DNA from: Takakia lepidozioides
Taxonomy: Eukaryota; Plantae; Bryophyta
Length of the DNA: 64,000 nucleotides
Reading direction: 5' to 3'
Assembly (NCBI GenBank): GCA_030704615.1
Contig: CM060731.1
Coordinates: 12,958,001 to 13,022,000, forward strand
This document shows, piece after piece, positions 6,478 to 52,500 of this stretch (position 1 is the stretch's first letter; the number at the start of each line of letters is the position of its first letter). Made by a program: the position numbers and the translations under genes. The notes below the pieces were generated by a model. That model was given only the letters and a program-made list of their open reading frames with translations, was not told the DNA's origin and did no database searches.

Positions 6478-8242
6478 TTAGTACAAATGGAGGGGCAGAC
6501 GAGGATTCGCCACCACCTTCAGCCTCGTAGCCATAGGCATCGTCATACCCTTTCCCTCTGTCATATCTATATCACTGCTACCAGCAGGCAGAGACCAGTC
6601 AAAAGCCTGTAGCAATCGTGAGAGAGATACCATGACGAAGCACTGCCCCAGTGAGGAACCAGGGCACCCTCGCCTGCCCGCACCGAATGGCAAAACTCGA
6701 AACTCTGCTGGGTCTCTCAAATCCACACTTTTGCTGCCATCGATCCACCTCTCTGGTCGAAATTCCTCGGGCCTCTCAAAGACTGCTGGGTTTCGACCCA
6801 AGCCAAACACATTGATCAAGACAGTAGTGTGCTTGGGTATATCGTAGCCAGCGATCTTGCAGGCCTCCATTGACATGCGGGGAAGCAAGAAAGAACCAGC
6901 TGGATGCAGGCGGAAAGTCTCTTTCAGCACTGCCTTGAGATACTGGAACTGATGTATATCGGATTCGTCAACTACGCGCTCCCGCCCACAACAGTGATCA
7001 ATTTCGTCTTGCACTTTACGCTGCACTTCTGGATGTCTCACAAGCTCCGCCAGCGCCCACTCCATAGTCACCGACGAGGTGTCGCTGGCTGCAGCAATCA
7101 TGTCCTGTAGGAATTACAAGAATGAAACGTTAACAAGCTTTGCATCTACCACACAGACGCAAAATGTATGATATGACTAGTACCTATCTTAGGGAAGAAG
7201 TCATGCTTTGCCAAATTCAATATTCCCGCAAACAGTATCTTCCAAGTTGCAGTAGTTCCGATTGGCTATCCTCGTGAATTGCACGTGAAGGAGTGATGGT
7301 TCATACGAAAAGCAAAGCCTCAGTTGTAGCGTCGCTTAAGTGCGGCTCTCCATTCTCCCCAGGCAGGGACAAGAGCACGTCCACGAAGTCATGACATTCA
7401 GCAGTCTCCTTCCTACCCTTCTGGCGGTGGTCTCGAATGACCACGCTCATCGTCGCCTTCATCTTCTTTTGTAACCGTTTCATTTGTCGCACATAGCCTT
7501 GGCAGTCCAAGGCTCGTAACAAGGGAACGTAGTCGCCTATATTAAATACGCCCAGAAGAAAAAACGCTTCATGCAGTATGTCTATGAATACTGCGGATAT
7601 CTCGGATGCCGCTGAGCCCCCGAAGTACCTCGTGCCAAACAGCATCCGTGATATAACATTCGTTACAAAGCTTTCAATTTTCTCCCGCATATGTATTGCA
7701 TGCCCTTGCTTGCAAGCCTGGAAGACCGTCCGGACCATGTCTTGAGCTTCTTCAGTCCTCTCTTTCCGGTAGAGCTCAATACGGTTGGGTGCGAGCAACT
7801 CCTGGACACATAGTTTTCGCATGTCACGCCAGTGGGCGCCATATGGGCTCATAGCTAAGCCCGCACCATTGCCGGCAACGTACTCACATTGTGCCAGTTT
7901 TGGCCTTGAACAGAATACATGGTCTTGATCTTTGAGAAACTCTCTAGCTATTTCAGGACAACTAGTAACAACTGTGGGCACAGAACCAAGACGAAGGTAT
8001 ACGAGAGGTCCATATTCTTTGGTGAACTCCAACATGCGTCGATGGGGGTACTCACCTATCTGAAGTAAGTTCCCCAGTACAGGCCATGGTCGAGGCCCCG
8101 GGGGAAGCTTGAGCTGGCCTCTCCTTAAGAAACTACGACGCAAAAACACCACCACCACTAAAGTCGCTAGCACTGACTGCAGAGGTGCGACCCACTCCCT
8201 CGAAACGCTGAGTCCTGCAAACTGAAAGAGAGAAAAACCCAT
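6478..8242 (-). CDS. CYP703-like: Cytochrome P450, CYP71 clan, CYP703-like (copy 1); exons 8242-7307 and 7104-6478, 520 aa
   Basis: N-terminal anchor and LPPGPRPWP hinge; DFVDVLLSLPGENG and DMIAAASDTS match CYP703 signatures; ETFR, PERW, FGAGRRGCPG heme motif; PRLPLHLY end; single phase-0 GT-AG intron at the conserved A-type position. Confidence 0.92.
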
Positions 8243-9319: not shown

Positions 9320-10085
9320 TTGTGACTGCGTATCATTTATGACTGTCATAATATTCCCATAGCTGGACATCGGGGTTTTCAGAGAACCTACGTGGCTGTT
9401 AGAAAACAATAGTTCTGGCCAAGAATGAAGAGACAGATCAAAGAGTATGTGGATAGATGTTTTCCATGTCAAGTCTCAAAATCAGAAAGGATACGTCCTC
9501 TTGGATTAGTACAACCACTAAGTGTTCCCAGTGGAAACTGGAATCGATAAGTATGGATTTTATAGTGGCACTGCCACAGACCATAAATGGACATAATAGC
9601 ATCATGGTGGTTGTTGATAGACTGTCCAAGACAACACACTTGATTCCCACAAAAATGACAGCCACACTGCCCCTGAGGTGGTTACCTCGTGAGATCCGAA
9701 AGATTTCTTTCATGAACAGTGAAGCCACCTCAGGGGCAGTGACTGTCATTTTGGTGGGAATCAAGTGTGTTGTCTTGGACAGTCTATCAGCAACCACCAC
9801 GATGCTATTATTTCCATTTCTGGTCCGTGGCAGTGCCACTATAAAATCCATACTTATCGATTCCCAGTTTCCACTGGGAACACTTAGTGGTTGTAATAAT
9901 CCAGGAGGACGTATCCTTTCTGATTTTGAGACTTGACATGGAAAACATCTATCCACATACTCTTTGATCTGTCTCTTCATTCCTAGCCAGAAATATTGTT
10001 TTCTAACGGCCACATAGGTTCTCTGAAAACCCTGATGTCCAGCTATGGGAATATTATGACAGTCATAAATGATACGCAGTCGCAA
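9320..10085. repeat. Long inverted repeat (fold-back) of retrotransposon integrase sequence; arms ~9320-9682 and ~9722-10085
   Basis: gactgcgtatcatttatgactgtcataatattcccatagctggacatc (9324) is the reverse complement of the block ending at 10081; similarity continues to the centre. Confidence 0.92.
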
Positions 10086-11450
10086 ATCCTGTAAAGAGGG
10101 AATGCACATACGCATGTGATAATATAATATCCCATCACGCAACAAGTATGGACGGTACTTGTCAATCTCATCAGCGGTCTGACGGTCATGCAAGAGGCTT
10201 TGATATGGTGCTTTGAAAAACACATCATCAGCATAATGATTCTTCACATCATCAATCATAGAGCTTTTCACAAATGACACCGCATTGACCATCGGCCTTC
10301 TAGAGAGTGCATCTGCCAGTACATTCTCTTTTCCCTTCACATACCGCAGATCATAATGAAACTGCTGAAGGAATTTAACCCATCGAATATGAGGACGACT
10401 CAAATTGGGTTGTGTACTGAGATATTTTAAACTCTCATGATCCGTTTCAATTGTAAAGTCCACAGGAAGCAAGTAGTGCCTCCATATCTTCAGTGCGTGA
10501 ATCATAGCCAAAAGTTCTTTTTCATGAACAGGATAATTCTGTTCAGCTGGACTGAGCTTTCTGGACTCATAGGCAATAACCTGACCACTTTGCATCAATA
10601 CTGCTCCAATAGCGAGGTCACTCGCATCAGTGCAAAGCACTATCTCATTCCTGGTAGGATCAATTAGCTTCAAGACTGGAGCATGAGTCAATGCAAACTT
10701 TAGCTTGTCAAAGCTAACAACACAATCTGGAGTCCAAGCTTCATTCCAATCTTTAGAAGTAAAGTTCTTTAGTAGATCAGTCATCGGGGCTACAATGCGA
10801 GAGAATGATTTGACAAAGTTTTGCATAAAGCTAGCAAACCCAACAAAGTTTCTGACTTCTGTTTTATCTTTGGGTTTGGGCCATTTGGCCACAGCCTGAA
10901 TCTTCTTTGAATCAATGGACACTCCATCCTTTGAGATATGAAATCCCAAATAGTCCAACATGATCTACAAAGAACTCACATTTACTCTTCTTTGCAAACA
11001 GATGATTCTGCCTTAAGATATCCAAGACCATTCTCAGATGTTGTTCATGCTCTTCTTCTGTTTTAGAAAATACAAGGATGTCATCCATGAAGACAAGAAC
11101 CATCTTGCCAAGGTATTTTCGAAACAGAGAGTTCATCAAGTGCATGAACGTAGCCGGAGCATTGGTAAGTCCAAATGACATTACCGTATATTCATAATGG
11201 CCAAAGCGTGATCGGAATCCAGTCTTAGGAATATCTGTATCCTTAATTCGTATCTGGTGGTAACCTGATCGGAGATCAAGTTTGGAAAAGACCTTACTCG
11301 CATATAGGTGATCAAAGATATCATCAATGCGTGGAAGTGGATAATTTATTCTTGATTGTCATTTTGTTCATCCACCTATAGTCCACACACAGCCCTAATC
11401 CACCATCTTTTTTCTTTCTGAACATGACTGGAGCGCCCCAATGGGATTTT
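9693..11450 (-). mobile_element. Ty3/Gypsy pol remnant: RT - RNase H - integrase N-terminal part (frameshifted)
   Basis: [19 protein letters not shown]; [12 protein letters not shown]; [10 protein letters not shown]; LCTDASDLAIGAVL; YESRKLSPAEQNYPVHEKELLA; GHQGFQRT..CFPCQ; WESISMDFI. Confidence 0.93.
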
Positions 11451-18290: not shown

Positions 18291-21200
18291 ATTTCAAAGC
18301 AATGGTGTGATAGCATTCACACACCTAAAATATCCCCTAGTGTGCTTAAATGAATCATGTGAAAGAATGTAGCATGAAGTAATAGTTTCACTCTCTTAAA
18401 TCAAGTGAGTGATGGTGCCAATGACAAATCATTGTGGTATACAAATATTTTTCACATGAAGGAAGGCAAGAAAAGGCAAGCTACACACACCTGCTGGCTG
18501 CAAGGTCGACGTTCTCCTCTTGCTTCCTCTTCAAACTCTACCCCGTTGGTGGTTTTTTACAAGAATAACGTGGTGACTTTCTAGTAAAGACAAGTAAATG
18601 AAAGTCACACAGGACGCGTGGAGCTCTACGATGCCCCCCGAGCTTCTCGGAACGTACGTTCGGCTGCATAACGCAGTTCTCTCTGGTTGGAGAACTAGGT
18701 TGCGTTTACGCGGGGGCGCCAGTGACGGGAAGCTCTGACAACGTTGCGCGCCGAGGCCCTGGGTTATGGGACCTGCGTTCCACAGACGTATATGGCCTGT
18801 GTGGCTCTGGCATCAATCAACTATGCTAGACTATTATCTTGCAAAATGGCCTTGAGCACATATGAATGCAAACCTTAAGCTTGAGATGGAGGGAACGATG
18901 CTGGTCTAAAGCTTACAACAACTAAAAAAAGACATAAAGTACAAAGACGTACACACCCTAAGCTTAAGATGGGAAGTCATGCTCATTCGGATAAAGCAAT
19001 GTACCACTCACAATTGAGACATAGACAATTTTGGTAAGCCTTAGTTGTATTGTAATCACTAAGTGTTATAATTATTAACAATACCTATATTTGTGGAGTA
19101 GATTGTCGTTACAAAATTTTGCATGATCAAAATCATGAAGAAAGGTTGTTGAATGCAATGTGATCCAAATGTGGAGGCTAATGTGACATGGACAACAAAC
19201 CTAGTACAAAGTTTGTTGAATTTGTTATAATTTATTTATTTAAATATAAAATTATTACTGAACCTCAAACATACAATTAATCAGAAGACAAAATTATTCT
19301 CCCACCTGTTCAGAACCCTAACTCACGTGGAAGTGACATTTATTATATTTTTGAGCGATTCTTAGCCGACATCGGCCAAGTGAGGGCCGACACATGGAAG
19401 TTTACCCTTGATGCACTTTACATGGTCATCCGTGCCCGTTGAATGACGTCACCATTGTCACGGGTCATATTTGTCTTTTGACCATGCTTCTAGGGCAAGA
19501 AAGCCAACATGCCTTGCAATGCTAGGATCTTTGGAAGTCTTAAGGTCATTGGCTATCATGAGCTTGTGTGCGTGGAGCTTTCCAATATTAGAGTTGCAGT
19601 GAGTTGCTTCTTGTGTTCTATAGCTATGAAAAGTGATTATTTTAATACTTGATGTAGTTGACAATTTCATCACATTAAGCTGGAAATTAAATAAATGATA
19701 TATATTTTAAGAACCCTTGATCACATGAATTGCATATGTAATACTGCAACTACATGAATCCATTGTGCAAGATAACAATATGAAACGAACAAGCACATTG
19801 GTGTTGCAAGCATTTGAAACCAAACAAGCAGCTAGACGCGTTTGGCTTCTCTTTGCGAATAGTGAAATCTACTTTCATCCATAATAAACTGAAAATTCAT
19901 CCATTTATTTTTCATAAATTGTTCAATAAGAAAGATGTTATCTGATGAAATAGTTTTCAGCAAATGAGATGAGGTAACGCATAGGGAAGGCACAACAGGG
20001 GCTCAACAATTTTTGACACTGATGCGTAGTCTCTTCCTTAGAATAAAGAGGAGCCAATAAACTTAAAACACGGAAAAGAACAACGATGCGAAGTACTAGT
20101 CGTGCATTCTAAGGGCCGTACGACACTAGCGGCATACCAACGACACTGATGTGGACATTGCAGGCTAGGGATTGTTGGATGATATAGGTCCATGTCAGCA
20201 AGCGGCAATGATTCGGCTACCACACTATAGCAGAAGCCCAATGGCAAAAAATATCGCAACTACCTTATCTTCATTCTAAAAATAACCAATTCCTCGAACC
20301 TTTGACATCGCATCGCTTCGCGATGGCGGGAGAATCGTGATACGACAAAATGACTTCCTAAAATTATGGATTTCCAGCGATGCTGCCTGGAAATCCGTAT
20401 TTCATGGTAATGTGACATGTAGGCGCCAGTTTGGAGCCATGTGAATGCCTCTCCACTGGCAACAACCGCTTGTGTGGTAGGCAGAGTGGCACACTGCCCT
20501 AAGGGTCCGAAATTGAGTGTCGCTGCCCCTTGCTGCTAGTGTGGTATCGCCCCAAGGCTAGAGATGACCTGAACCTAGATGTTTGCTATTAATATTGGCT
20601 ATAAGTAGCCAGTCTTGTACTATCACGGGCCTATAATCTACAAGACTTCGGAGTTTGCAAGCCATAGCATCCGTTAACGGATAAAGGGTACATGGTAATG
20701 CATTTTTAGCATGGGAAGGGAGAAAATAGCAGAAAATATTGGGTATGACGTCATAATCAGGGGCGAGCATGTAAATGGCTCTTAGAAGGTGGACACTTCG
20801 AACCTTGATCGCCCATGTTATGCACAGACGAGGCACAATAAATAATCGATTGTATTTTATTTACATAGCAAGTTTTCTATGTATCGGCAGCTTCCTGAAA
20901 CTGCTTGAAGACATTGGTTGTTGGCATGGTGGTCATCCATGACCCATTCCCACCAATGTTTGTTAATACATTCTCTCTGGAATCTGGCCACATATTCCCC
21001 ACGTTTCCTGCAACTATCTCATGTGAGACAGGAAGTCGTGAATTCTGCAGAGGAATTTCATGGAGGGGATCTCGCCCTGATGAGGGTTGATGCCACTACT
21101 GGCCAACAACATGGTTGCCATTGGCAGAAGAGTTGTGACGTTTGCTGTTTGGATGTCCCCAATACTCTTCCTCTGTTTGTGGGTCATCACCCCTTCCGTG

Positions 21201-37126: not shown

Positions 37127-37637
37127 AGGTAGAAACACACAAATATGAGCAGGTCTCAAAATGGACCCCTATTTTTGGGGTGTAAAGTGGTCCCCCCTGC
37201 CCTTAAATGGCGACCTGATTTAGGTTCCTTCATGGGCATTGTGGGCCCCATGGTGCTTTGTTAGATGAACAAAAACGTACTGAATACTGTGACCAGCGTG
37301 TTTGCCAAATGGAGAGCTTTTACAGGATGCCTTTTACTCTTGTGGGCCGAGCTGTTGAGTGAGTTATTGGGCCATTTCAAGTGCATATCAGGTCAAATGT
37401 AGGCTTCATATTAGATAATATTTCAGCGAGTTATGGTACCCTCTATAGCTAGGCATAGCATTTTTGTGCCCTGCCACTTTGACAATATATATCAATTAGC
37501 CACTTCGTCCAAAATTCATGCAATTCAAACCACAAGCTGTTTGTTCAATTGCTCATCCAGTCATATAATTTTTCCCCTTACTGCACCAATTGTACGGGCA
37601 TATCTGCTGAAGCGCTCACATTTGGGTGTAACTACCT
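37127..37637. mobile_element. 511-bp MITE with ~24-bp imperfect TIRs and TA TSD, inserted in the last codons of P450 copy 2
   Basis: gggg ta|aggtagaaacacacaaatatgagc ... gctcacatttgggtgtaactacct|ta gacgagg; the paralog has the uninterrupted site ggggcagacgagg. Confidence 0.9.
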
Positions 37638-39374
37638 TAGACGAGGAGTTGCTACCACCTTCAGCTGCGTAGCCATAGGCATCGTCATCCCTTGTCCCTC
37701 TGTCATATCTATATCACTGCTCCCAGCCGGCAGAGACCAGTCAAAAGCCTGTAGCAATCGCGAGAGAGCTAACGTGACCATGCACTGCCCCAATGCCGAA
37801 CCAGGGCACCCTCGCCTGCCCTGACCGAATGGGAAAAATCGAAACTCTGCGTCTCTCAAATCCACACTTTTGCTGCCATCGATCCACCTCTCCGGGAGAA
37901 ATTCCTCGGCCCTCTCAAAGACTGCTGGGTTTCGGCCCAAGCCAAACACATTGATCAACACAGTGGTGTGCTTGGGTATATCGTAGCCAGCGATCTTGCA
38001 GGCCTCCATTGACATGCGGGGAATCAAGAAAGCACCAACTGGATGCAGGCGGAAGGTCTCTTTCAGCACTGCCTTGAGGTACTGGAACTGATGTATATCG
38101 GATTCGTCAACTACGCGCTCCCGCCCACAACAGTGATCAATTTCGTCTTGCACTTTACGCTGCACTTCTGGATGTCTCACAAGCTCCGCCAGCGTCCACT
38201 CCATAGTCACCGCCGAGGTGTCGGTGGCTGCAGCAATTATGTCCTGTTGGAGTTGCAAGAATGAAACGTTAACAACATTGGCAACTACCACACGAACCCA
38301 AAATATGTGATATGACTACCTATCTATGGGAAGAAGTCATGCTTTGCCAAATTCACGACTAACGTAAATGATGTCTTCCAAATTGCACTGGTTCCGATTA
38401 CAAGCCTCGTGAGTTGCACGTGAAGGGGTGATGGTTCATACGAAAAGCAAAGCCTGAGTTGTAGCGTCGCTTAAGTGCGGCTCTCCATTCTCCCCAGGCA
38501 GGGATAAGAGCACGTCCACGAAGTCATGACAATCCTCAGTCTCCTTCCTACCCTTCTGGCGGTGGTCTCGAAAGACTGCGCCAAGCCCTTTCGTCATCTT
38601 CTTTTGTAATTGTTTCATTCGGCGCACGAAGCCTTGACAGTCCAAGGGTCGTAACAAGGGAACGTAATCCCCTATGTTAAATACGCCCAGAAGGAAAAAC
38701 GCTTCATGCAGCAACTCCATGAAGGCTGCAGTTTCCTCCATTGGCTGTGAGCCCTCCCCAAAGTACCTCACGCCAAACAGCATCCGTGTTGTGATATTCG
38801 TTACATAAATTTCAAAATTCTCCCTCATTACTATTCCATCCCCCTGCTTGCAAGCCTGGAAGACCGTCTGGACCATGTATTGAGCTTCTTCAGACCTCTC
38901 TTTCCGGTAGCGCTCAATACGGTTGGGTGCGAGCAACTCCTGGACACAAATTTTTCGCATATTACGCCAGTGGGCGCCATATGGGCTCAAAGCCATGCCC
39001 GCACCATTGCCGCCAATGTACTCAGATTGTGCCATGTTTGGTCTTGAACAGAATATATGGTCTTGATCTTTGAGAAACTCTCTAGCAATTTCAGGACAAC
39101 TGGTAACAGCTGTGGGCACAGAACCAAGACGAAGGAAGACGAGAGGTCCATATTGTTTGGTGAACTCCACCATGCGTCGGTGGGGGTACTCACCCATCTG
39201 AAGTAAGTTCCCCAGTACAGGCCATGGTCGAGGCCCCGGGGGAAGCTTTAGAGATCTCCGTAAGAAACGACGTAAAACCACTACAACCAGCAAAGTCGCT
39301 AGCACTGACTGCAGAGGTGCGACCCACTCCCTCGAAACGCTGAGTCCTGCAAACTGAAAGAGAGAAGAACCCAT
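37632..39374 (-). CDS. CYP703-like: Cytochrome P450, CYP703-like (copy 2); exons 39374-38442 and 38243-37632, 514 aa, stop codon supplied by the MITE
   Basis: Close paralog of copy 1; DIIAAATDTSAVT, ETFR, PERW, FGQGRRGCPG; same intron position; original tail PLHLY* stranded at 37107-37124. Confidence 0.9.
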
Positions 39375-41101: not shown

Positions 41102-42322
41102 TTGTTACAATTTCCTTCGCATAAGTACTGTGAACCAGCAAACATACAAGTCAGAGAGCGCACTCTGTCTAGACTGCCTCCTCGTGTGGTTGGTAGATGC
41201 AGCATGGTGTGCAAGAGATGGAACACACTCATCGGAGCGACAGCAAAGACATTCCATCAGATGAGTAGGAAGAATTTCAAAAAAATATCAATCAATGTCG
41301 TCACACGCAATGCTTTCCATACCACCTATGTTGTATCACAAGACTGGACCATGTTGGACTTTGAGACAGGGGAACCGCACACTCTCACGGATACGTTCCT
41401 AGAGAGCCTTGAGGGCATGCAAGGCTTTCGCGAGCGGAGGACAGTAGCTGCTGGGGGCAGTCTCATATGTGTGCTATATATGGGGTCGCCAGCCGGTCAA
41501 GGCAGTGTCATGGTAGTTTGCAATCCTGTTGCCAAGACAATGAGAAAACTCCCACCCTTAAATGTTTACAGCTGCTATGGCCAAGTCAATCCAGCTGTGG
41601 TAATTGTGGTGGATAACAAAACCCGGACCTACAAGATATTTGTCATAAATGATTTCAACAAGCACCAACCTGCCTTGCCTCGACTGCATGTGTATGACTC
41701 AGCCACTCGCATGTGGCGCAGCCGATGCAATCCACCAGAACATACCACTAAGCATTCTAGCCACAATATGAGACGCCTTGTCAACAAGGTTGAGCCGATG
41801 TACTTGCAACCCCCTCTCCCCGTTTCGAGATTTATCCCTGGCTGCCACCATGAAGACGACGAGCCACAACTAGTTGAGGAATTTGGAGATTCCCAGGCAT
41901 GCGCACACCCACCTCGTTCCACTTGTCCTCCTGAATGTTGTATGCTACAAGCAAGTGGCCCATGTCATTCCCCAAATAAAATAGAGTGTAGAGCAATCCT
42001 CCATAACTGATGGTTGAGCTCGATGAAATACAGTCTGGTCGATGTAGATGCTGAAAATGATGGGCCTTGGAGTACAGTGAACCGCAACATAGGGTGCAAC
42101 CCAAAAATTGTTGCAGTCGGCAATAAGAGGAGCGTTTACATCAGGATATCACCTATGGATCCAATTTGGTATGATGTGGAATTTTCAAAAGGTAGCTGGG
42201 GCATGGTGGAGTGGGGCTACCCGCGGTCGGAGGAACCATGGCCCCCAAACTGGTTACTAACCAGACGCCAAAGAGGGTGGTATGGAAGTCAAATGAGCCT
42301 CAGCTTCAGTACTCTTCTGTGA
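41102..42322 (+). pseudogene. F-box/kelch-like beta-propeller gene disrupted by an internal inversion (~41738-42023)
   Basis: F-box ERTLSRLPPRVVGRCSMVCKRWNTLI; MVVCNPVAKTMRKLPPL; VYDSATRMW; the middle portion reads on the minus strand; true start uncertain. Confidence 0.8.
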
Positions 42323-43984
42323 ATTTGGTTGGCAATCCTGCATGCTTAGATGACCAAAGTTCAAATATCTTTGCAACCACATGAGTCCATTTAAGTTTCA
42401 TCAGTTTATATGATGCCAGCTGATCAAGTTTTGGTGTACTTTTGAAGCGTGGATGCATCCAGAGCTTCAATTTTTGAACCGTATGTACATTGAAGTGCTC
42501 AGAAGTTCAGGACTCATTTTTCATGCAACCATCGTCTCCAGCAACAACGTAGGTCGTTACTTGGGATTTGTTGAAGAAACTACTGTGAGCTTTAATGGTC
42601 AAGACTGGAACAACGTATCGCCTAGAGGCTCACACAGTTTTGACTTGATTCTGAAAGCTGTATCTGCCTATTGGTGGCATCTCTCTCAGCTCTTTCTCTT
42701 TTGTACAACATGTGATGGTTAGTTTAAGGAAGTAGATTCAATCCTTGCTGCTTGTTGACGTTCAGTGTAAATGCTCTCTAACACAAGTTTACTATGCTGA
42801 GCTTTAAAGTGTTTTCCTGATGAACCTCCATGAGGCATTTACTTACCGAATGTATGCTAGTACAGTGTGCAGTGTGCTAGACCTGCCTGTTGCCGATCAG
42901 CCATCAAATTTGATACAATCTGCCAAAGATGAGACTTCCCACCCCGTAAAGTCGCTGCAGCCATCAGTGGGGCCAGCCACACTGTAGTGAGGGAAGCTGA
43001 ATTCTTCTTTCCGAAAAGTTGTTGTAAGCTAAGGTCGAAGGGCCTCCCATATAGTGAGCACTAAGTCATTCATGGATCCCTTTGAAGTGGACAAGTCAAA
43101 GACGTAGAGGTGCAGAGCAGCAGGCTGGCGTTGAAATTCTTTTAATGTAGAGAGTTGAATGGGCGACTTGAGATCACAGCCAACTTATTTCTGCAGGTGC
43201 CAGCCTCGTTTTGGTTATGAGTTGGCTCTGAATGAGGACCTGGGATAAAGCAATAAGCCATTGAGAGATCATGAAGCTTAGTACGTATCAGTTCTAGCAT
43301 TCACACAGACTCTTGAAAATGACATCAGCAGCAGCATATGTGTAGGAATCATGTCGGTTGCAAGGTCCTTAGCCACTAGGTGGAAAGTGGGTCTGCGGAT
43401 ATGGCATGTCTAGAGAGTTGATAAGTTACCAGCGTATACAAGAAAGAAGAAGCTAAATACCGAAGTGCAGGCATTTGGGTTACATTGAGCAAGTCCAAGA
43501 CTTCACAACTCATACCGCTTAGGTGTGTAGTTATCAGTTCAGTGAGGCATATTGTGACATTTCTTGGATATTTTCTACCCTTAGTCCAAACTCCACACTT
43601 GACGGCAAATGTAATGATCATGTAGAGGTGACCAACGGTGGGCTTTGACATGACAGCTACATGAATGTTTTTCCTATGTACACGTTCTCCAACAACCCTC
43701 TTAGCTGGAATTGCCGCTTCCATTTACTTCATCTCCTCTTCTGTAAAGCACTGTCCCCGCCCTACACTGAACCCAGCACGCCAACGGAATACAGCGGTAT
43801 ACAGGAATTTTAGAAGAAATATTCCCAAAGGATACTAGAATTGATTGAAATATTCGTTACGGACGGAAGGCATCAATGTTCCCAACTCAGGGTAGTGGAG
43901 GGGAGGGGAGGGGAGGGGAGGGGTGGGGTGCGGTGAGGTGGGGAGGGACGGGAGGGGGCGAGGGGAGGGGAGGGGAGATCAGCG

Positions 43985-44679
43985 ATGGCCAAGTCGTGCA
44001 AGGGCCTTGCTCTGGAGCTCGTAAAGTGTCTCAGTGAGTCCCATTGCATGAAGGTATACACGTCTGATCCTTACCCGCTGCATTTGTTTTCATAGGCATT
44101 TTCCAGTTTCAGTCACATTGCATTCATCAGAGCCCTAAACCCTGGATGTTTGATTTCCTTTCGGATCCCACCCTCTTTTCTTCCCCAATTCTGTTTCTTT
44201 GAGAGAAATTATAGTTCTCGCCGCGTTAGAGCGCGTTGGCAAAGAGACTTTTTGGTAGGGACAACGTTTTCGTTAGACAATTGAGCTACAGACAGGGACG
44301 AATCATGAAGAGATGGACAATTGCAAACACAGGAGGAGAAGCGTTCCTACAAGGACTGTGCAGGAGGGAAGAGTCCATCGGTTCCTTCTGAATGCGTGGG
44401 CTTACGGGAGACCTACTTTCAGTGCAAGCGTGGCCAGGTTTCCTTCATGTTTGTTGAATCTCGTAAAATGTCTCTTACGAAACGAGGAATATTTGGTCAA
44501 CTACTACGGGTTGCATTGCATTAAATTCCTTGACAAAACTGAAAGAGAATTCATTTCACCTCTGATCAGAGACCAACAACTGAAGGTGTTATAAGCAGAA
44601 CCTTTCTCAGAGGATTTTCAGGGTGGCTGTGGGACAGGTGGATATGACGAAGCGAATTCGAGGAAACAAGGGCTACTGA
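43985..44679 (+). CDS. COA5: Cytochrome c oxidase assembly factor 5 (COA5/PET191), 71 aa; exons 43985-44053, 44333-44437, 44638-44679
   Basis: Spliced product MAKSCKGLALELVKCLSESHCMK-EEKRSYKDCAGGKSPSVPSECVGLRETYFQCKRGQ-VDMTKRIRGNKGY*; Cx9C pattern and conserved RGNKGY end; phase-0 GT-AG introns. Confidence 0.93.
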
Positions 44680-44789
44680 CCATCAGTGGAGATCCTCTGT
44701 TCATGATGCTGTGAGTTTGGAAGGTGTACCTATTGTAGCGCGACTTGTAGTATAGTGGTGATTGGACAGGAACTTCAGAGACTGTGGCC

Positions 44790-47700
44790 ATGGGGGATGT
44801 CTTGCCAAACTCGGCGATTCTCAATCACATCCAAGCTCTCGTCTGTGATGCCCTGCAAGTGGTATGCATTCAAGATCTCTGCCTCCCTGTTTGGGTCAGC
44901 ATTATGTTTTCTCATAGATATGACCTTGAAGTCAACAATCAGGCTTCAACTACACGGGATGATGCTGTGACATTTTGGGCTCAGTCATCCACAGTTAAAA
45001 CCATATGACCGGCTGGGGAGGGCTAGGAGACTGTGGGAACTATGCTCTCGCATGGTCTTTCCTTCCTGAGGTCACAGGAATAGTTAATGGGTTCTCATGG
45101 TCAGCTTCTTTGCTTGCCTTCTTCAGAACTCTTTAAGTTTGATATCTTGGAAGCTCTACTAAGCCATGGACTGTGGGCTGGAGGGAGCTTATGATGGTGG
45201 GCTTTCAGTCTTATGATGGGACTTTCTGCAGTAAATGTTCTTTTTAATGTGTGAGATAAAAGAGGTTTAATTGATAGAGGTAGGCCACAGTAGAGAACTG
45301 GTATTGCATGGGCTGATGGTGTCAATGTGGAGGGGGATGTGCAGGTTTCCTACAAGTGGCTGAGCCGAAAGTTCTCGGTTTCATCAAATGCAGCGAAGAG
45401 GTAGCCTCTTATCCATACCTTATTGGATGTCATATAAAAATCCATGTGGTTCTCAGGCAATAGTCCCACATCCTGCACAAGTTTCTGGCTGCTAATCTTG
45501 TAGCTGAATGTCGTTTTTTGTAGATCGTTGTCCGAGGTTGATGTCTGTGTGGGTGGGATAGGGTTCTACAGGAGTTTGTGGAACAGAATGATGGAGAAAA
45601 AATAGAGGTCGTGTATGCAGTGTCAGGGTGGACCAAGACTGAGCCCCGTAATTACTCAGTTCAATTGGTTCTCAAGGCCAAACTACAAGGTGCTAAGCTG
45701 GTATTTTGTCTCTGAAAGTCCCTTGATCATCCTGGTGTGGTTGGATCTGCTACCTTATGAATGTCTGTATGTAGGTGGAGACTTGCAACCTATGGACTTT
45801 ACTTTCTCTCTTTCTTCCCTCCTTTAGTTGCTTTTGGGCTGCTTTTTGCTCACTCTTTGTGTGGTTTCTTTTACTCATTCTTGTTTCTTGTTTATTTCCT
45901 TCCTTTGCCTGGTGAAACTTAGCAATGCGAAAAATACAGATAAAAGAGTTGAATGTTCCCTGTCTGCACAGAATGTAGCGGAGCATGCAAAATAGGTATT
46001 TATTTGTTTGAAAAGGAACTTTGACTTCCTCATCAAGAGCGGAGAAAGAAATTGGGGGGAGAATTCATTTTCTTGTGTGTTGACTGTGGCAGAGGCAAGA
46101 CAAGTGTTGGATGGGACACCATCATACCATGTGTACAGTGTGCAGCCATGTCTGCCCAAGGATTCTGCACAGCTTTGCATGGCTGACTTGGTGCAAGCAC
46201 AGGAGCTCTTTAACCAGCCCCCAGAGGTTGCCAATTGTCTTCGTGACAATCGGTAAGACTAGAAACTCCTTTTCAGATCTTTGTGGATTGTGTCTGTCTG
46301 TAGGTGCTACAGTAGGGTCCGTCAAATACGTTCGGACTGTTTGAGATCCATTGATCACCCTCTTTTCAGAGCCGATTCACTGACCTTGATGTTATATGTA
46401 ATGATGTGGGCATGGCACCTTCCCCTGGGCTCTATCAATGTGGGGTTACTTCAATGAGTTGAACTAGTGTGGGAACTTTAGTGCCATTATGGTCAACAGA
46501 AACGTGTCATCCCAGCTTGCTCTATTGATGTCAGAGCTTTACCTGGCGAATGTGTCAAGTTGACCCCTAAACCGGTAACTGCTGCTTGAAATAGATGATC
46601 AAGCTAATTTCTGCTGCATGTTCTTGTGCGTATCTGGTGTGCAGGTTCAGTGCGGTGTCATGCTCACTCGTGACAAGAAGCTTTGGAGGAAAGAAGTCAG
46701 CTCATCCCAGCCAGATACCACCCCCTTCCACAAGCAATCCTCAAAGAAGTGTTCCCCCTGTTCCAAAAGCTTTGACAGTATCAAAGGCTGTCAGGACAGA
46801 CTCTCTTGAGGACTCCACAGTAACTTGCAAAATACCCCCAAGCAGTTCGGCTGAGGTCAAGGAGATAGGCAGAGGGAAAAGCTCAAACATTACAGCTGCT
46901 GCTGGAAATGTTTCTGTGGAAAAGGGGAAAGCAGTGGCAAGAGGAGATAGTCGCAAGATCCCTCCAACTTTGGGGAATGCAGAAGGGAGGGCAGAGGTCA
47001 AGGAGGTAGGTGCAAAGAAAAGCTCCAGCATTTCAGGGGCAGCTGCAAAAGGTGCTGGTGGACATGTGGCCGCAGGAATGGGGAAAATGGCAGCAAGTGG
47101 AGGGGGTTCTTTGGCAAGTCTCTGGGGACGAGCATCCAACAAACCCAAGCCCTCTGATCCAAAGGCTTCGGATTCAAAAGCTGCAAAGCTCTCTTTGCCC
47201 AACTCGAATGCCGGTACCCTACTGATATATTATATTCCATCTGCAGTTTCAATACTAAGTATTATGTTGAGAATTTTCAAGGTCATGCATACATTGGAGG
47301 CTACACATTCCCAATAGCGAGTGTTTGTTTCTAGATTGTTTTTTGGTGTTACATAGATGGAGATGAATGTTTTGACTACAGTTGCGGTCCCATTATACTA
47401 TCAGGACTGTCAAATGGAAGGACCTAGTCTTTTTCTTATTGGAGGGTGTATGCTCTCAGGAACCATCCAAAATCACCAAAGAAGACCGATTTGGTCTCAG
47501 CAATCTGCAGTACCCTCAAGAAGTCATCTCCTTATCATACATAGTCATCCAGGGTGATTCAACTTGGAAAACGCCTGACTGATTGCCTCCATGGATAAAC
47601 CAGAACTAGTTCCTGAGATAATATATGTCTTGCTTGCAGCCGATGCTGAGGCTGGGATTCGAGCTATGGAGACCAATGGGAGTGAAGCAAGCAGTGATGA

Positions 47701-49382
47701 TGATGCCGCTGACTTTGCCCAGATCCGCCGGGGCCACGTGAAGACAAGCACAGGTAGGAAGCGACAGTTGATCATCGATGAGGAAGACGAGGGCAGGAGT
47801 GGTGATGGTTGTGGGGGCCTGGCTGCTGAGGAGATTGTGAACTTGGCCTCTCCAGAACCTCTGGCGGATGTGTCAGCAGAGATTTCTTTAAGGAGGGCCT
47901 CCGAAAATGTCACGATGCCTGCTAGCAGGATTCCGAGGACTAAGGAGAGTGATAATGAGCAGAAGGGGATGGATGTGAATTTTAGTACATCCTCAGTGGG
48001 TGACGAAGAGTTGAATCGCGAGTCTCCAATGAATCAAGCTGCAGACACATTGGAGCATGCTTCTGGTCAGTCAGTGGAGAAAGTGAGTGGGGTGAAGAGG
48101 GAAGGGGAAGATGGACCAGGGTTTGTAACCAATGAGAAAGCTTCATCATCATTGGGTGGCCCAAAAAGGAAGAAAGTGCTCAAATCACGAATTGACGATC
48201 ACGGCCGAGAAGGTACTGGGAGAGAATTTCTTTTAGTGGGGAAGCTTTCCTCTCATAGATTGATACAGGTCAAGAGGCATGGTTTTTATCCTTGTGTTGG
48301 ACCTGTGTGCCATACCCAGAGATATGAGAGTGCATTTTTGCCCATATCATGTTCCTGATATTGGGAAAGAGGATGTGGATTCATTGTAGTATCAAGGATA
48401 TGCTGGTTGCTAAGGCTCAAGGTCTCAAGGGACAGTCAAGGTGGACTGCAGCATACTAGCGCATACTGATGGAGGTCTTAGTGTCCAGTTGGAAGTCACT
48501 GGCTGTCTTAGGAACCTCTTGATTTTTATGTGCTGAACTGGATATTCTTCTTGTTTTAAGTTGTTAGTTTATTGCCCTGAAAATTTGGTGATTGATCAAG
48601 TTTAGCCAGAGCTTCTCTGTGATGTTCACATAGTTTGTAGCAGCATTTTGACAACAAAGGCAAAGGAATGACTAATGACTAATGAAACTTGTTTCTGCTC
48701 AGTGATGGAAGTGGTCTGGGAGACCGATGGAGTAGAAGAAAAGGAGAAACAGGGTCTACGGTTAGCAGCCCAACCTGCAGCGCCTCCTGTTGTACATGCA
48801 AAACATGTGGCAGACAAGTGAGATTGCTTCCCCACTCTCTCACACTATGTTCTTTTCTGCTCCTTCCACACTGTGCGCACGAGTTTATGCCACAAGGCTG
48901 TGACTAGTCTAATGAGTACTTCCCTTCTTCTCACACAGACCCATTTCTGCTCCATCCAAACTTGGTTGAGGGCCTGTGGTGACCCTACAACACACTAACT
49001 GGTATCCATGGCCACAAAAACAGGGACATTCATTCTATGAGGATATTCTCAAACTTAAGTCTAAGGCAGTAGGGACAGCGTCTGTCATGCGAAAGCATTT
49101 GCAGGGTAAATTCTATGTTACTCACACATATGCCCCTCTTGTTCTTCCTCTTGTTGTCCTGTTCTGTGAATAGGATGCTCAGGTTTAGCATTATGGCGAC
49201 TAGATTCTGATGAATGTTTTTCTGTTATCCATGTTGTTGGTGCCAGGCCTGCTGCATCAGATACCAAGGTTCCCAATATACAGAAGGGACCTTCCACCAA
49301 GGCTCCTAGCAAGTCTGCCGGGAAGGCTGCAGGAAAAGGGCCGCAGAAAGGGAATTTGTTTGCTTTCTTCAAGAAGGTGTAG
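44790..49382 (+). CDS. POLD3: DNA polymerase delta subunit 3 (POLD3/Cdc27), ~602 aa; exons 44790-44861, 45345-45400, 45562-45689, 46093-46252, 46645-47213, 47640-48212, 48703-48817, 49247-49382
   Basis: VSYKWLSRKFSVSSNAAKR..VVYAVSGW; HVYSVQPCLPKD; KRKKVLKSRIDDHGREVMEVVWE; C-terminal PIP box QKGNLFAFFKK; all introns GT-AG and phase-consistent (1809 nt total). Confidence 0.92.
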
Positions 49383-49494: not shown

Positions 49495-49580
49495 CCTCCC
49501 TGAGACCATCTTAAAAATGTGAACCTAAACTTGGCCTCCCTGAGACCATCTTAAAAATGTGAACCTAAACTTGGCCTCCC
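49495..49580. repeat. Perfect 40-bp tandem duplication downstream of POLD3
   Basis: cctccctgagaccatcttaaaaatgtgaacctaaacttgg x2. Confidence 0.92.
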
Positions 49581-52500
49581 AGAGCCCCGCAATCTGAGTA
49601 TTTTAATCAAACCATTCACACCACACTCAACTTGACCTAATGCCATGAGACCCCTAGTACATGCGCCTGTGAAGTCACCAACAATGAGCATTATCAGAAA
49701 TATTCTTCTGAGAATAGATTGTTTGTAGAAAACTTGACAAATACAGGGTGGGGGGAGAGTGACAGAATGCCAGTGAGGACTTATGCAAGCCACTAACCTG
49801 TTATTGCGTAACATTCAGGTCTTGTTGGATTGAGAGACTGCCCCAAGTTCACCATCTCTGCAAGAAATCAACTAGGATTGAGGTGAGATTAGTAGGAATT
49901 CATCCCTTGGGATCCCTCATCCAACAAGCCAAAAACAAACCAATTTGGCTAATGCATGTGATGTTGCCACTTGGTCAAACCTGGGCAAATCCCCTCTTTC
50001 TCTCAAACACACACACACACACACGTGAAGAAGTCATAGCATGAAACTAAGAGAATTACCTCATCAAAACTTGACCCCTGCTTGTGTGATGAGACAACTT
50101 TGCAACTGGGCAGTGAATCCTGATGTGCCAAGTGCCCAGAAACACTAATTTGTTTTTACACAATTTCATGGAGAACTAAAAAGTTATTCAAAAAATTCTA
50201 AACCCAAAAGCCCAAAACCGGCTTGGTGGGCCTTTAGTAGGGGTCCCAAAGCAAAAGGATTGGTGGTACATTGTATATGTCACATAATGATGTGCAATAT
50301 GTTGTGCACATATATAATGGTGCTTTGCAGGTAACTACCTTTAATGTTTGACTTGAGTGGAGGTTATCAAGTCCGCCAGACATCAGCTAGCTGATGTTAG
50401 AGACTAGTTGGGCTTGTGGACAAACAAAGTTGTGGAGGACCAACCTATACCATCAGTCTTTTCTTAACCATCTCCTGCTCCATCAGCCTGACCATTTCTT
50501 CATACCGTGACTTTGTCTCATCGCTCTACACTTTCAAGCCAAACATCGATAACAGAGATTATGAAATAGTTGGCCACCAAATTAGAGAATGTCGTATCTA
50601 TACCACTTTCATATACATTTTATCTACTATAAAAGGTTGGATTCCCAAGTAGGTGCTATGGTAAGCCTCATTCAAATATATTTTTGGTTTGGTAAGTGTT
50701 GTAACAAAAGTTGCAAAGAAGCACAAAAATTATGAGATCGTAGCGAATTAATATCTTTGATTGATGTAAATCTGGTGTCTCAGCAAAAACTCCAATGACT
50801 TAAAGATGATTTTTTTATGAAGATTGTTGTATTGTGTTTGGAGTTTTTGGACTTTGTCATTCTTTCATAATTTTGTTTACTAGATTTTGTCTAGTCAACA
50901 ATATGTTGGAGACGCTTGTATCTAATCTACAATATAATTGGTTGAACAATATCTTTTAGATGCATAGATTATATGTAACGGTTGTTTATAACACTAATGA
51001 AATGGTACTATGGTCTAACCATTGGAGTGTCCTTGGAGTGTCTAATGGATGTCTTGAAATTCAAGACTGCTGATATAATGAAGCTCATGCGTATTAGGCA
51101 CTTGTACATAATTGCCTCATTTGTGTGCCACCAATGTTCTAAGCTATCATAGGATTACAAGTCATTTCGACTTTCATTTGAGATTCCATCAGTCAGTTTG
51201 TCCTTTTTGTGTTGCTTGAACAAACAATTACATTTTCGCTTGCAAGCAAAACATAATTTTGTGAACCCCCGAATTGATGCTACAAGCAATTCTTGAACAA
51301 CAACCCAGTTAACAATCAACCTTTTCAAATTGAAGTTCAATATTATTTCTAGAGCTAAGCTATACTATGGTTGGGCTAAAACTCAACCTCGTACATTTGG
51401 TCCAATGAATCACTCCCATATATGTGAAGGAGGAGCATGGAGCCATAAGCAAGAAGCACAAGAAGAAGCCGATTGTCGTTCGAGATTGGCCAACTCAGAG
51501 TTACCATCCTGTTTGGGACGAGGGGAACAAGAAGACGGCAATTGCTGTTCGAGATTGGCCAGAGGGTTGCCATCCTGTTGGGGACGAAGCATTAGCCTGT
51601 GGTTGTTTGGGGGATGAGGATGAGGAAGGGACTGTTGATTTTACAGATTTATGGAATTCAGCTTCTATTCGTGTATTTGGATGTTGCAAATACTTAAGAT
51701 ATATCTTTGGGTGTAGAAGCTGGCAATTCAGTCATTATGTGATTGTGCATTGACAACCAATGAAACCGTTTTGGTTTTTGTTACATGTGTATTATTTTGG
51801 GTCGATTTTTTGTTTTAAGGTCTGAATCCAATCCAATCCAATCCGATATCGATCTTGCCATGTTTGAATTCAGCAATAACAGTTTTTTTAAACGTAAACT
51901 CATACAAAGAATGAACGCCATGCAATTCATATAAAGCTTGTTGATAATAATGTATTTGAATTGTTTCAGTGATATCATTGTTTTGAATTTGCAAAGTTTG
52001 CAAGAAATGAGCCATGTTGTCACAACGTCACGATGTAGAGCTTTGGGCATTACGCAATTTTGTATATTCAGTACATTTGACATGTATAAAAATTATCAAT
52101 ATATTGCTGGTGATTGTTTGTTTGATTTTGGAGTTGGAGTGTGGCTGCAATATTGATTATGGATGTACTAAGCTCCCCTTGGTAAATCTGCCGCCGATAG
52201 GTTGATTAGACGGGTGACATGTATCGGTTTTAACCATGTGCAAGGTATTCCACGACTTAATCACAAGCCTTGACATGAAATTATTTTAAGAGAGGACAGA
52301 TAGAGACATGTGGCGCGGTGGGCCTGAAGCGGAGGGCCTGAAGCGGAGGGAAGCGGAGGTAAGCGGAGAGCAGTGTAGGAAGCGAAGAGAGTTGTGCACT
52401 TAAACCCTCCTGCCTCAACACCTCTCCTTGTTGTTAGCGCATGCACATTTTCACATTTTCACAGTAGATCTTTCTTAGTTGTTGTTTGTTGACATTAAAG

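What the first reader, a model, noticed from the sequence alone, without database searches (positions are those of the whole stretch)
43985..49382. COA5 and POLD3 packed 110 nt apart on one strand: candidate bicistronic nuclear transcript
Seen: an intact spliced COA5/PET191 ORF stops at 44679 and an intact POLD3 starts at 44790 (gccATGg context). The only promoter-like, purine-rich region lies upstream of COA5 (~43895-43980). The spacer has no evident AT-rich terminator/promoter and contains a possible 59-nt intron (gtgagt...acag, 44711-44769). Known: bicistronic mRNAs with a small conserved upstream ORF occur in plants (CDC26-TTM3) and are common in green algae; I know of no COA5-POLD3 case. 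Inference: a 71-aa mitochondrial complex IV assembly factor may act as a coding uORF of a replicative polymerase subunit, coupling respiration and DNA replication through leaky scanning or reinitiation.
Basis: partly seen in the sequence, partly recalled or inferred. Interest (0 to 1): 0.85.

Follow-up and report, generated by a model that had tools for sequence, protein, structure and literature searches.

The report
Moss-wide two-protein nuclear mRNA
In every moss checked, a small mitochondrial assembly protein gene (COA5) sits about 100 bases before a DNA polymerase subunit gene (POLD3), and the two appear on one spliced RNA, a rare two-protein message in a land plant that seems not to have been reported.

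Summary
Observation confirmed: intact COA5 (71 aa) stops at 44679 and intact POLD3 (602 aa) starts at 44790. A spliced RNA contig from this species runs from COA5 exon 1 through the unspliced spacer into POLD3 exon 5. The pair, with an 86-116 nt spacer, is kept in Sphagnum, Physcomitrium, Ceratodon and two further mosses, and spliced contigs span both ORFs in four of them. It is absent from liverworts, lycophytes and seed plants; hornworts were not tested. In green algae COA5 also abuts another ORF, but an ISE2-like helicase, a GNAT or a PPR protein. That points to a microprotein riding on long mRNAs rather than to respiration-replication coupling. The proposed 59-nt intron is not spliced. The algal leaky-scanning hallmarks fail: the COA5 AUG is strong and internal AUGs are not depleted. 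How POLD3 is translated is therefore open; I favour low-level leaking plus reinitiation, and a second POLD3 start site is the main rival. Contigs are not molecules, so long reads are needed. The scan noted a second copy in this genome (s1-462148). I found no paper on this pair.

The parts
43889..43977 (+). (AGGGG)18 microsatellite just before the COA5 AUG; G-quadruplex-like; leader or promoter not settled; no such repeat in the leaders of the other moss RNA contigs read
43985..44053 (+). COA5 exon 1 (start gcgATGG, strong context)
44333..44437 (+). COA5 exon 2 (Pfam Pet191_N); holds an out-of-frame AUG in weak context that opens a 40-codon ORF ending in the spacer
44638..44679 (+). COA5 exon 3 coding part, with invariant Met61 (gatATGa; 11 codons to the stop) and TGA stop; same exon continues into POLD3
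44680..44789 (+). 110-nt inter-ORF spacer, unspliced, stops in both frames, tiny ORF MML* at 44703-44714, no AUG in the last 80 nt
44790..44861 (+). POLD3 first coding segment (gccATGG)
45345..45400 (+). POLD3 exon 2
45562..45689 (+). POLD3 exon 3
46093..46252 (+). POLD3 exon 4 (weak Pfam CDC27 hit)
46645..47213 (+). POLD3 exon 5
47640..48212 (+). POLD3 exon 6
48703..48817 (+). POLD3 exon 7
49247..49382 (+). POLD3 exon 8 coding part, C-terminal PIP-box-like motif, TAG stop

Best explanation
COA5 and POLD3 form one transcription unit, fixed in the common ancestor of mosses. One capped mRNA carries a ~40-80 nt leader, the COA5 ORF, a ~100-nt spacer and the POLD3 ORF, and both proteins are made from it. 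Shown: both ORFs intact and under purifying selection, spliced contigs across both, conserved spacing, no fusion protein. Inferred: most ribosomes start at the strong COA5 AUG and make COA5. A minority scan past it; some of these are caught by short internal ORFs (the 11-codon Met61 ORF, 1-13-codon ORFs early in the spacer), reinitiate, and reach the POLD3 AUG after an AUG-free 65-100 nt stretch. This would give much COA5 and little POLD3. The pairing is best read as a microprotein riding on a housekeeping mRNA, locked in because neither gene has its own promoter and 3' end, not as a designed link between respiration and replication.
For: One 919-nt spliced contig covers COA5 exon 1 to POLD3 exon 5 with the spacer unspliced; no contig lies in COA5 intron 2 or POLD3 intron 1 in either run. 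Spliced contigs holding both whole ORFs: L008, Physcomitrium L018 plus 2 similar, Sphagnum L031, L036. Spacer 86-116 nt in 8 Sphagnum genomes, Physcomitrium, 2 Ceratodon and L001, while the flanking COA5 introns vary 200-1157 nt. COA5 dN 0.02-0.14 against dS 0.5 to saturated. Spacer frame varies and every spacer has stops. Out-of-frame AUGs: 6 in the first 35 nt of six spacers, 0 beyond, about 9 expected from stand-alone COA5 3' regions (cut-off chosen after seeing the data). Weak: in run X2 the summed depth at the COA5 exon 1-2 joint (64) matches POLD3 joints (65-67). Algal COA5 abuts three other partners.
Against: Assembled contigs cannot tell one transcript from two overlapping ones, and the spanning contig here is a mosaic of two gene copies in COA5 exon 2. 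COA5 start context is strong in 6 of 6 moss lineages and AUGs inside COA5 are not depleted (0.83 against 1.0 out-of-frame), unlike algal bicistrons (PMC11892635). In an Arabidopsis reporter a 50-70 aa uORF abolished reinitiation (PMC9786829). The AUG-free distal spacer would equally fit a POLD3 leader. No translation data.
Confidence: 0.62

Rival explanations
1. The long two-ORF mRNA exists but serves COA5 only. POLD3 protein comes mostly from a second, shorter transcript that starts in COA5 exon 3 or the spacer, driven by a promoter inside COA5. That embedded promoter is what locks the genes together.
For: Both standard routes to ORF2 look inefficient. The AUG-free last ~65 nt of the spacer looks like an ordinary leader. 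Downstream start sites that avoid uORFs are common in Arabidopsis (PMC6064979). The full POLD3 ORF is on record on far more Physcomitrium Logan contigs (238 for one gene call) than the full COA5 ORF (3), though 5' truncation and gene calling can explain that.
Against: No coverage of COA5 intron 2, so any second start must lie within about 150 nt. Run X2 shows no step up in depth from COA5 to POLD3 (weak). No conserved motif in the aligned spacers.
Confidence: 0.22
2. Two separate monocistronic genes whose UTRs overlap: COA5 mRNA ends in the spacer or POLD3 exon 1, POLD3 mRNA starts nearby, and assemblers merge them.
For: The tool itself warns that a contig across two genes shows no single transcript. 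Plant poly(A) signals are degenerate (own knowledge).
Against: COA5 would have at most 169-188 nt of 3' UTR before POLD3 intron 1, which has no coverage. No AATAAA-like hexamer in any spacer. Spacer composition (G over C, skew -0.24 to -0.44) differs from the sequence after the stop of stand-alone COA5 genes (0 to +0.39). The merge recurs in five independent species.
Confidence: 0.09
3. Bicistronic, and selected for regulation: COA5 acts as a functional uORF that ties POLD3 output to growth or energy state, for example through TOR-dependent reinitiation after the whole 71-codon ORF.
For: Kept across all moss lineages sampled; the spacer AUG pattern fits a refractory window after termination; TOR promotes reinitiation in plants (PMC9786829).
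Against: COA5 stands alone in liverworts, lycophytes and seed plants and has unrelated partners in algae. Most algal bicistrons pair unrelated functions (PMC11892635). No regulatory data.
Confidence: 0.07

Closest known systems
CDC26-TTM3 bicistron of plants and green algae (Lorenzo-Orts 2019, as cited in PMC7943633, PMC11892635)
   Same: A small conserved protein that is a stand-alone gene elsewhere, encoded ahead of an unrelated larger housekeeping ORF; stop codon upstream of introns, so a potential NMD substrate.
   Different: Different genes; confined to mosses among land plants sampled; ORF1 has two introns of its own; the upstream protein changes partner between lineages; single-molecule and protein evidence are lacking here.
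Green algal bicistronic loci (PMC7896298, PMC11892635), including ones with complex IV assembly factors PET100, COA4-like and COA6
   Same: Short upstream ORF, short inter-ORF stretch, random relative frame, unrelated functions, mitochondrial microprotein.
   Different: COA5/PET191 and POLD3 are not in the held supplements of PMC11892635. ORF1 context is strong and upstream AUGs are not depleted, so the weak-Kozak model does not carry over directly. It is a land plant.
Conserved-peptide uORFs (CPuORFs) of plants
   Same: Peptide-conserved upstream ORF under 100 codons ahead of a main ORF.
   Different: COA5 is a known twin-CX9C mitochondrial protein that is monocistronic in other plants; nothing suggests a stalling peptide.
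Arabidopsis readthrough transcripts degraded by NMD (PMC9768141, abstract only)
   Same: One RNA covering two neighbouring genes.
   Different: Those are occasional; this arrangement is fixed across mosses and the spacer is not spliced.

Membership tests
Nuclear bicistronic mRNA (algal and CDC26-TTM3 type) | Two non-overlapping, intact, same-strand ORFs close together | tested here: met
   71 aa and 602 aa, 110 nt apart
Nuclear bicistronic mRNA (algal and CDC26-TTM3 type) | Both ORFs on single full-length mRNA molecules | tested here: inconclusive
   spliced short-read contigs span both ORFs in five species; no long reads available
Nuclear bicistronic mRNA (algal and CDC26-TTM3 type) | No start site or poly(A) site between the ORFs | tested here: inconclusive
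   no coverage in COA5 intron 2 or POLD3 intron 1, no AATAAA-like hexamer; contigs cannot show ends
Nuclear bicistronic mRNA (algal and CDC26-TTM3 type) | Separate polypeptides, not a fusion by read-through or splicing | tested here: met
   spacer length modulo 3 takes all values, stops in both frames, spacer unspliced
Nuclear bicistronic mRNA (algal and CDC26-TTM3 type) | Both ORFs translated from that mRNA (Ribo-seq, proteomics) | not testable with these tools
   indirect only: purifying selection on COA5, conserved POLD3
Nuclear bicistronic mRNA (algal and CDC26-TTM3 type) | Arrangement conserved between distant species | tested here: met
   Sphagnum, Physcomitrium, Ceratodon, L001/L036, L008
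Leaky-scanning bicistron as defined in green algae (PMC11892635) | Weak initiation context at ORF1 | tested here: not met
   gccATGG or gcgATGG in 6 of 6 moss lineages
Leaky-scanning bicistron as defined in green algae (PMC11892635) | AUG depletion upstream of ORF2 | tested here: not met
   no depletion inside COA5; depletion only in the distal spacer
CPuORF (stalling peptide) | Peptide-dependent control of the main ORF | not testable with these tools
   COA5 is stand-alone in other plants, which favours a protein in its own right
IRES-type bicistron | Conserved structured element in the spacer | tested here: not met
   fold z-scores +0.8 to -1.4, no Rfam hit, no conserved alignment

The most novel reading that the evidence does not exclude
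Mosses make an essential DNA polymerase subunit solely from the second ORF of an mRNA whose first ORF is a strongly initiated 71-codon protein, by a reinitiation route that current plant rules say should not work. COA5 is a portable upstream microprotein that has been coupled to at least four different partners in the green lineage.
Probability: 0.25. Interest if true: 0.8.

Novelty: new member of a known kind. Interest (0 to 1): 0.6.

Why it matters
Deeply conserved two-protein nuclear mRNAs are common in green algae, but in land plants CDC26-TTM3 is the main worked case. This is a second candidate, present in the gene-targetable model Physcomitrium, and it breaks the sequence rules that explain the algal cases. 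That makes the open question of how plant ribosomes reach a second ORF directly testable at a native locus. COA5's partner swapping offers a natural series for how bicistrons are gained and lost. In practice, knock-outs or promoter studies of either moss gene may disturb the other.

Tried and rejected
59-nt spacer intron: not spliced in any spanning contig. Fusion protein by read-through or splicing: frame not conserved, stops present. IRES or conserved RNA structure: none. Weak ORF1 context and AUG depletion in COA5: not found. C/G skew as a sign of a start site in the spacer: uninformative, neighbours vary as much. Hidden partner ORF after COA5 in liverworts and lycophytes: none of 80 aa or more within 6 kb in Marchantia or the liverwort RNA contig, nothing within 5 kb in Riccia and Diphasiastrum; Selaginella has a convergent gene. 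Literature: ten searches and two supplement look-ups gave no COA5-POLD3 report; the library lacks most subscription papers, the CDC26-TTM3 paper was not held, and no supplement of PMC7896298 was held. A first POLD3 exon model was wrong and was corrected from the RNA joints.
Full report
Observation. The window holds an intact three-exon COA5/PET191 ORF (43985-44679, 71 aa, twin CX9C pattern) and an intact eight-exon POLD3/Cdc27 ORF (44790-49382, 602 aa), 110 nt apart on the + strand. The region is not compact otherwise: an F-box-like ORF ends 2 kb upstream and no ORF of 150 aa follows POLD3 in the window. Database searches were made exon by exon, with single unspliced ORFs by reference, or with database proteins. 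The joined models were never sent to a search tool; they were built only inside local scripts, for frame checks, AUG counts and one tree.

RNA from this species. Two RNA-like runs, kept as contigs, show all nine GT-AG joints. In run X1 one 919-nt contig runs from about 12 nt before the COA5 AUG through COA5 exons 1-3, the whole spacer unspliced, and POLD3 exons 1-5. Neither run covers COA5 intron 2 or POLD3 intron 1. So a separate POLD3 start would have to lie in COA5 exon 3 or the spacer, and a separate COA5 end within 182 nt of its stop. Limits: contigs are not molecules, the runs are only guessed to be RNA, and this contig carries two letters of a second gene copy in COA5 exon 2. That second copy, about 92% alike in POLD3 exons 5-6, is in both runs.

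Conservation. COA5 is followed by POLD3 at 86-100 nt in eight Sphagnum genomes, 97 nt in Physcomitrium, 116 nt in Ceratodon, 101 nt in an unnamed moss (L001) and 104 nt in another (L008). The spacer sequence is not conserved between lineages, but its length is, while COA5 introns range from 200 to 1157 nt. Spliced contigs holding both complete ORFs exist for L008, Physcomitrium (three runs), Sphagnum (L031) and the L001 lineage (L036). A POLD3 tree places the window as a deep moss branch, unresolved with Sphagnum and the remaining mosses. The linkage therefore dates to the moss common ancestor, some 400 million years ago (own knowledge). It is absent in Marchantia, Riccia, a liverwort RNA contig, Selaginella and Diphasiastrum and in the seed-plant contigs fetched; locus tags put the two genes far apart in Riccia, Diphasiastrum and Cryptomeria. 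Hornworts were not tested.

Partner swapping. In GC-rich green algal contigs, COA5 again ends just before a long ORF: an ISE2-like DEAD/DSHCT helicase at 4, 38 or 65 nt (L078/79, L072, L073), a GNAT acetyltransferase at 18, 29 or 32 nt (L074, L075, spliced L047), and a PPR protein at 196 nt on spliced contigs (L009-12). These algae are unnamed here, and most of these loci are DNA. Four unrelated partners make a specific COA5-POLD3 functional link unlikely. Published algal bicistrons mostly pair unrelated functions and already include PET100, COA4-like and COA6 proteins, but not COA5 (PMC11892635).

Mechanism. A fusion protein is excluded: spacer length modulo 3 takes all values, and stops occur in both frames. 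No conserved structure suggests an IRES. The algal rule of a weak first AUG fails: all six moss lineages have G at -3 and G at +4, contig leaders reach 43-78 nt, and COA5 has as many internal AUGs as stand-alone COA5 genes. Reinitiation after the full 71 codons is also doubtful, since 50-70 aa uORFs abolished it in an Arabidopsis reporter (PMC9786829). What the sequences do show is a gradient in the spacer: six AUGs opening 1-13 codon ORFs in the first 35 nt, and no out-of-frame AUG beyond, against about nine expected (shuffle test P about 0.003; post hoc cut-off, six partly related lineages). My preferred reading is low-level leaking past the first AUG, capture by short ORFs such as the invariant Met61 ORF of 11 codons, and reinitiation across the AUG-free stretch. 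The same gradient fits a short POLD3-only transcript starting in the spacer, a known way round uORFs in Arabidopsis (PMC6064979). That is the main rival. I put the existence of the two-ORF mRNA at about 0.9 and POLD3 being made mainly from it at about 0.7.

Novelty. This works like CDC26-TTM3 and the algal bicistrons and is best filed as a new, still unproven member of that kind. It fails the two sequence hallmarks of the algal leaky-scanning subtype. I found no report of the pair, within a library that lacks most subscription papers. Interest 0.6: real, old, testable in a model moss and mechanistically puzzling, but of a known class and without single-molecule or translation proof.

Noticed in passing
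window 44670: Run X2 has a contig (depth 16.7 of 51.3) lacking one G near the COA5 end; if real it would shift the frame and extend COA5 to a stop inside the spacer. May be an alignment or assembly artefact.
   Followed up: no
window 46981-48069 and 44367, 44380: A second copy of the locus, about 92% identical in POLD3 exons 5-6, is present in both RNA-like runs at similar depth: a homeolog or recent duplicate.
   Followed up: partly
L078:2292-5825, L072, L073: Green algal COA5 lies 4-65 nt before an ISE2-like DEAD/DSHCT helicase; a candidate conserved algal bicistron not found in the held supplements of PMC11892635.
   Followed up: partly
L074:936, L075:1627, L047:401, L066: Algal COA5 lies 18-32 nt before a GNAT acetyltransferase; L047 is a spliced contig, and its genomic counterpart L066 appears to have an intron in the spacer.
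   Followed up: partly
L009:61-3550: Spliced algal contigs carry COA5, an AUG-free 196-nt spacer and a PPR protein ORF of over 1026 aa.
   Followed up: partly
L017:17298, L021-L028 ~19100-20900: A NAC (NAM) gene follows POLD3 in both Physcomitrium and Sphagnum, in opposite orientations: wider micro-synteny.
   Followed up: no
window 43876-44037: A weak-context AUG before the AGGGG repeat opens a 53-codon ORF overlapping the COA5 start out of frame; it matters only if the leader extends that far.
   Followed up: no
window ~44090-44296: Run X1 has a low-depth contig inside COA5 intron 1: pre-mRNA, intron retention or DNA.
   Followed up: no
window 6478-8242 and 37632-39374: Two two-exon cytochrome P450 genes on the minus strand, with an LTR-retrotransposon remnant (RNase H, integrase zinc finger; 9438-10961) between them.
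   Followed up: partly
window 41102-42010: F-box / beta-propeller-like ORF upstream of COA5.
   Followed up: partly
window 49495-49584: A 40-nt tandem duplication in the POLD3 3' region.
   Followed up: no
L032:1-3718: A liverwort COA5 contig has 1.2 kb before and 2.2 kb after the ORF with no other long ORF on that strand.
   Followed up: partly
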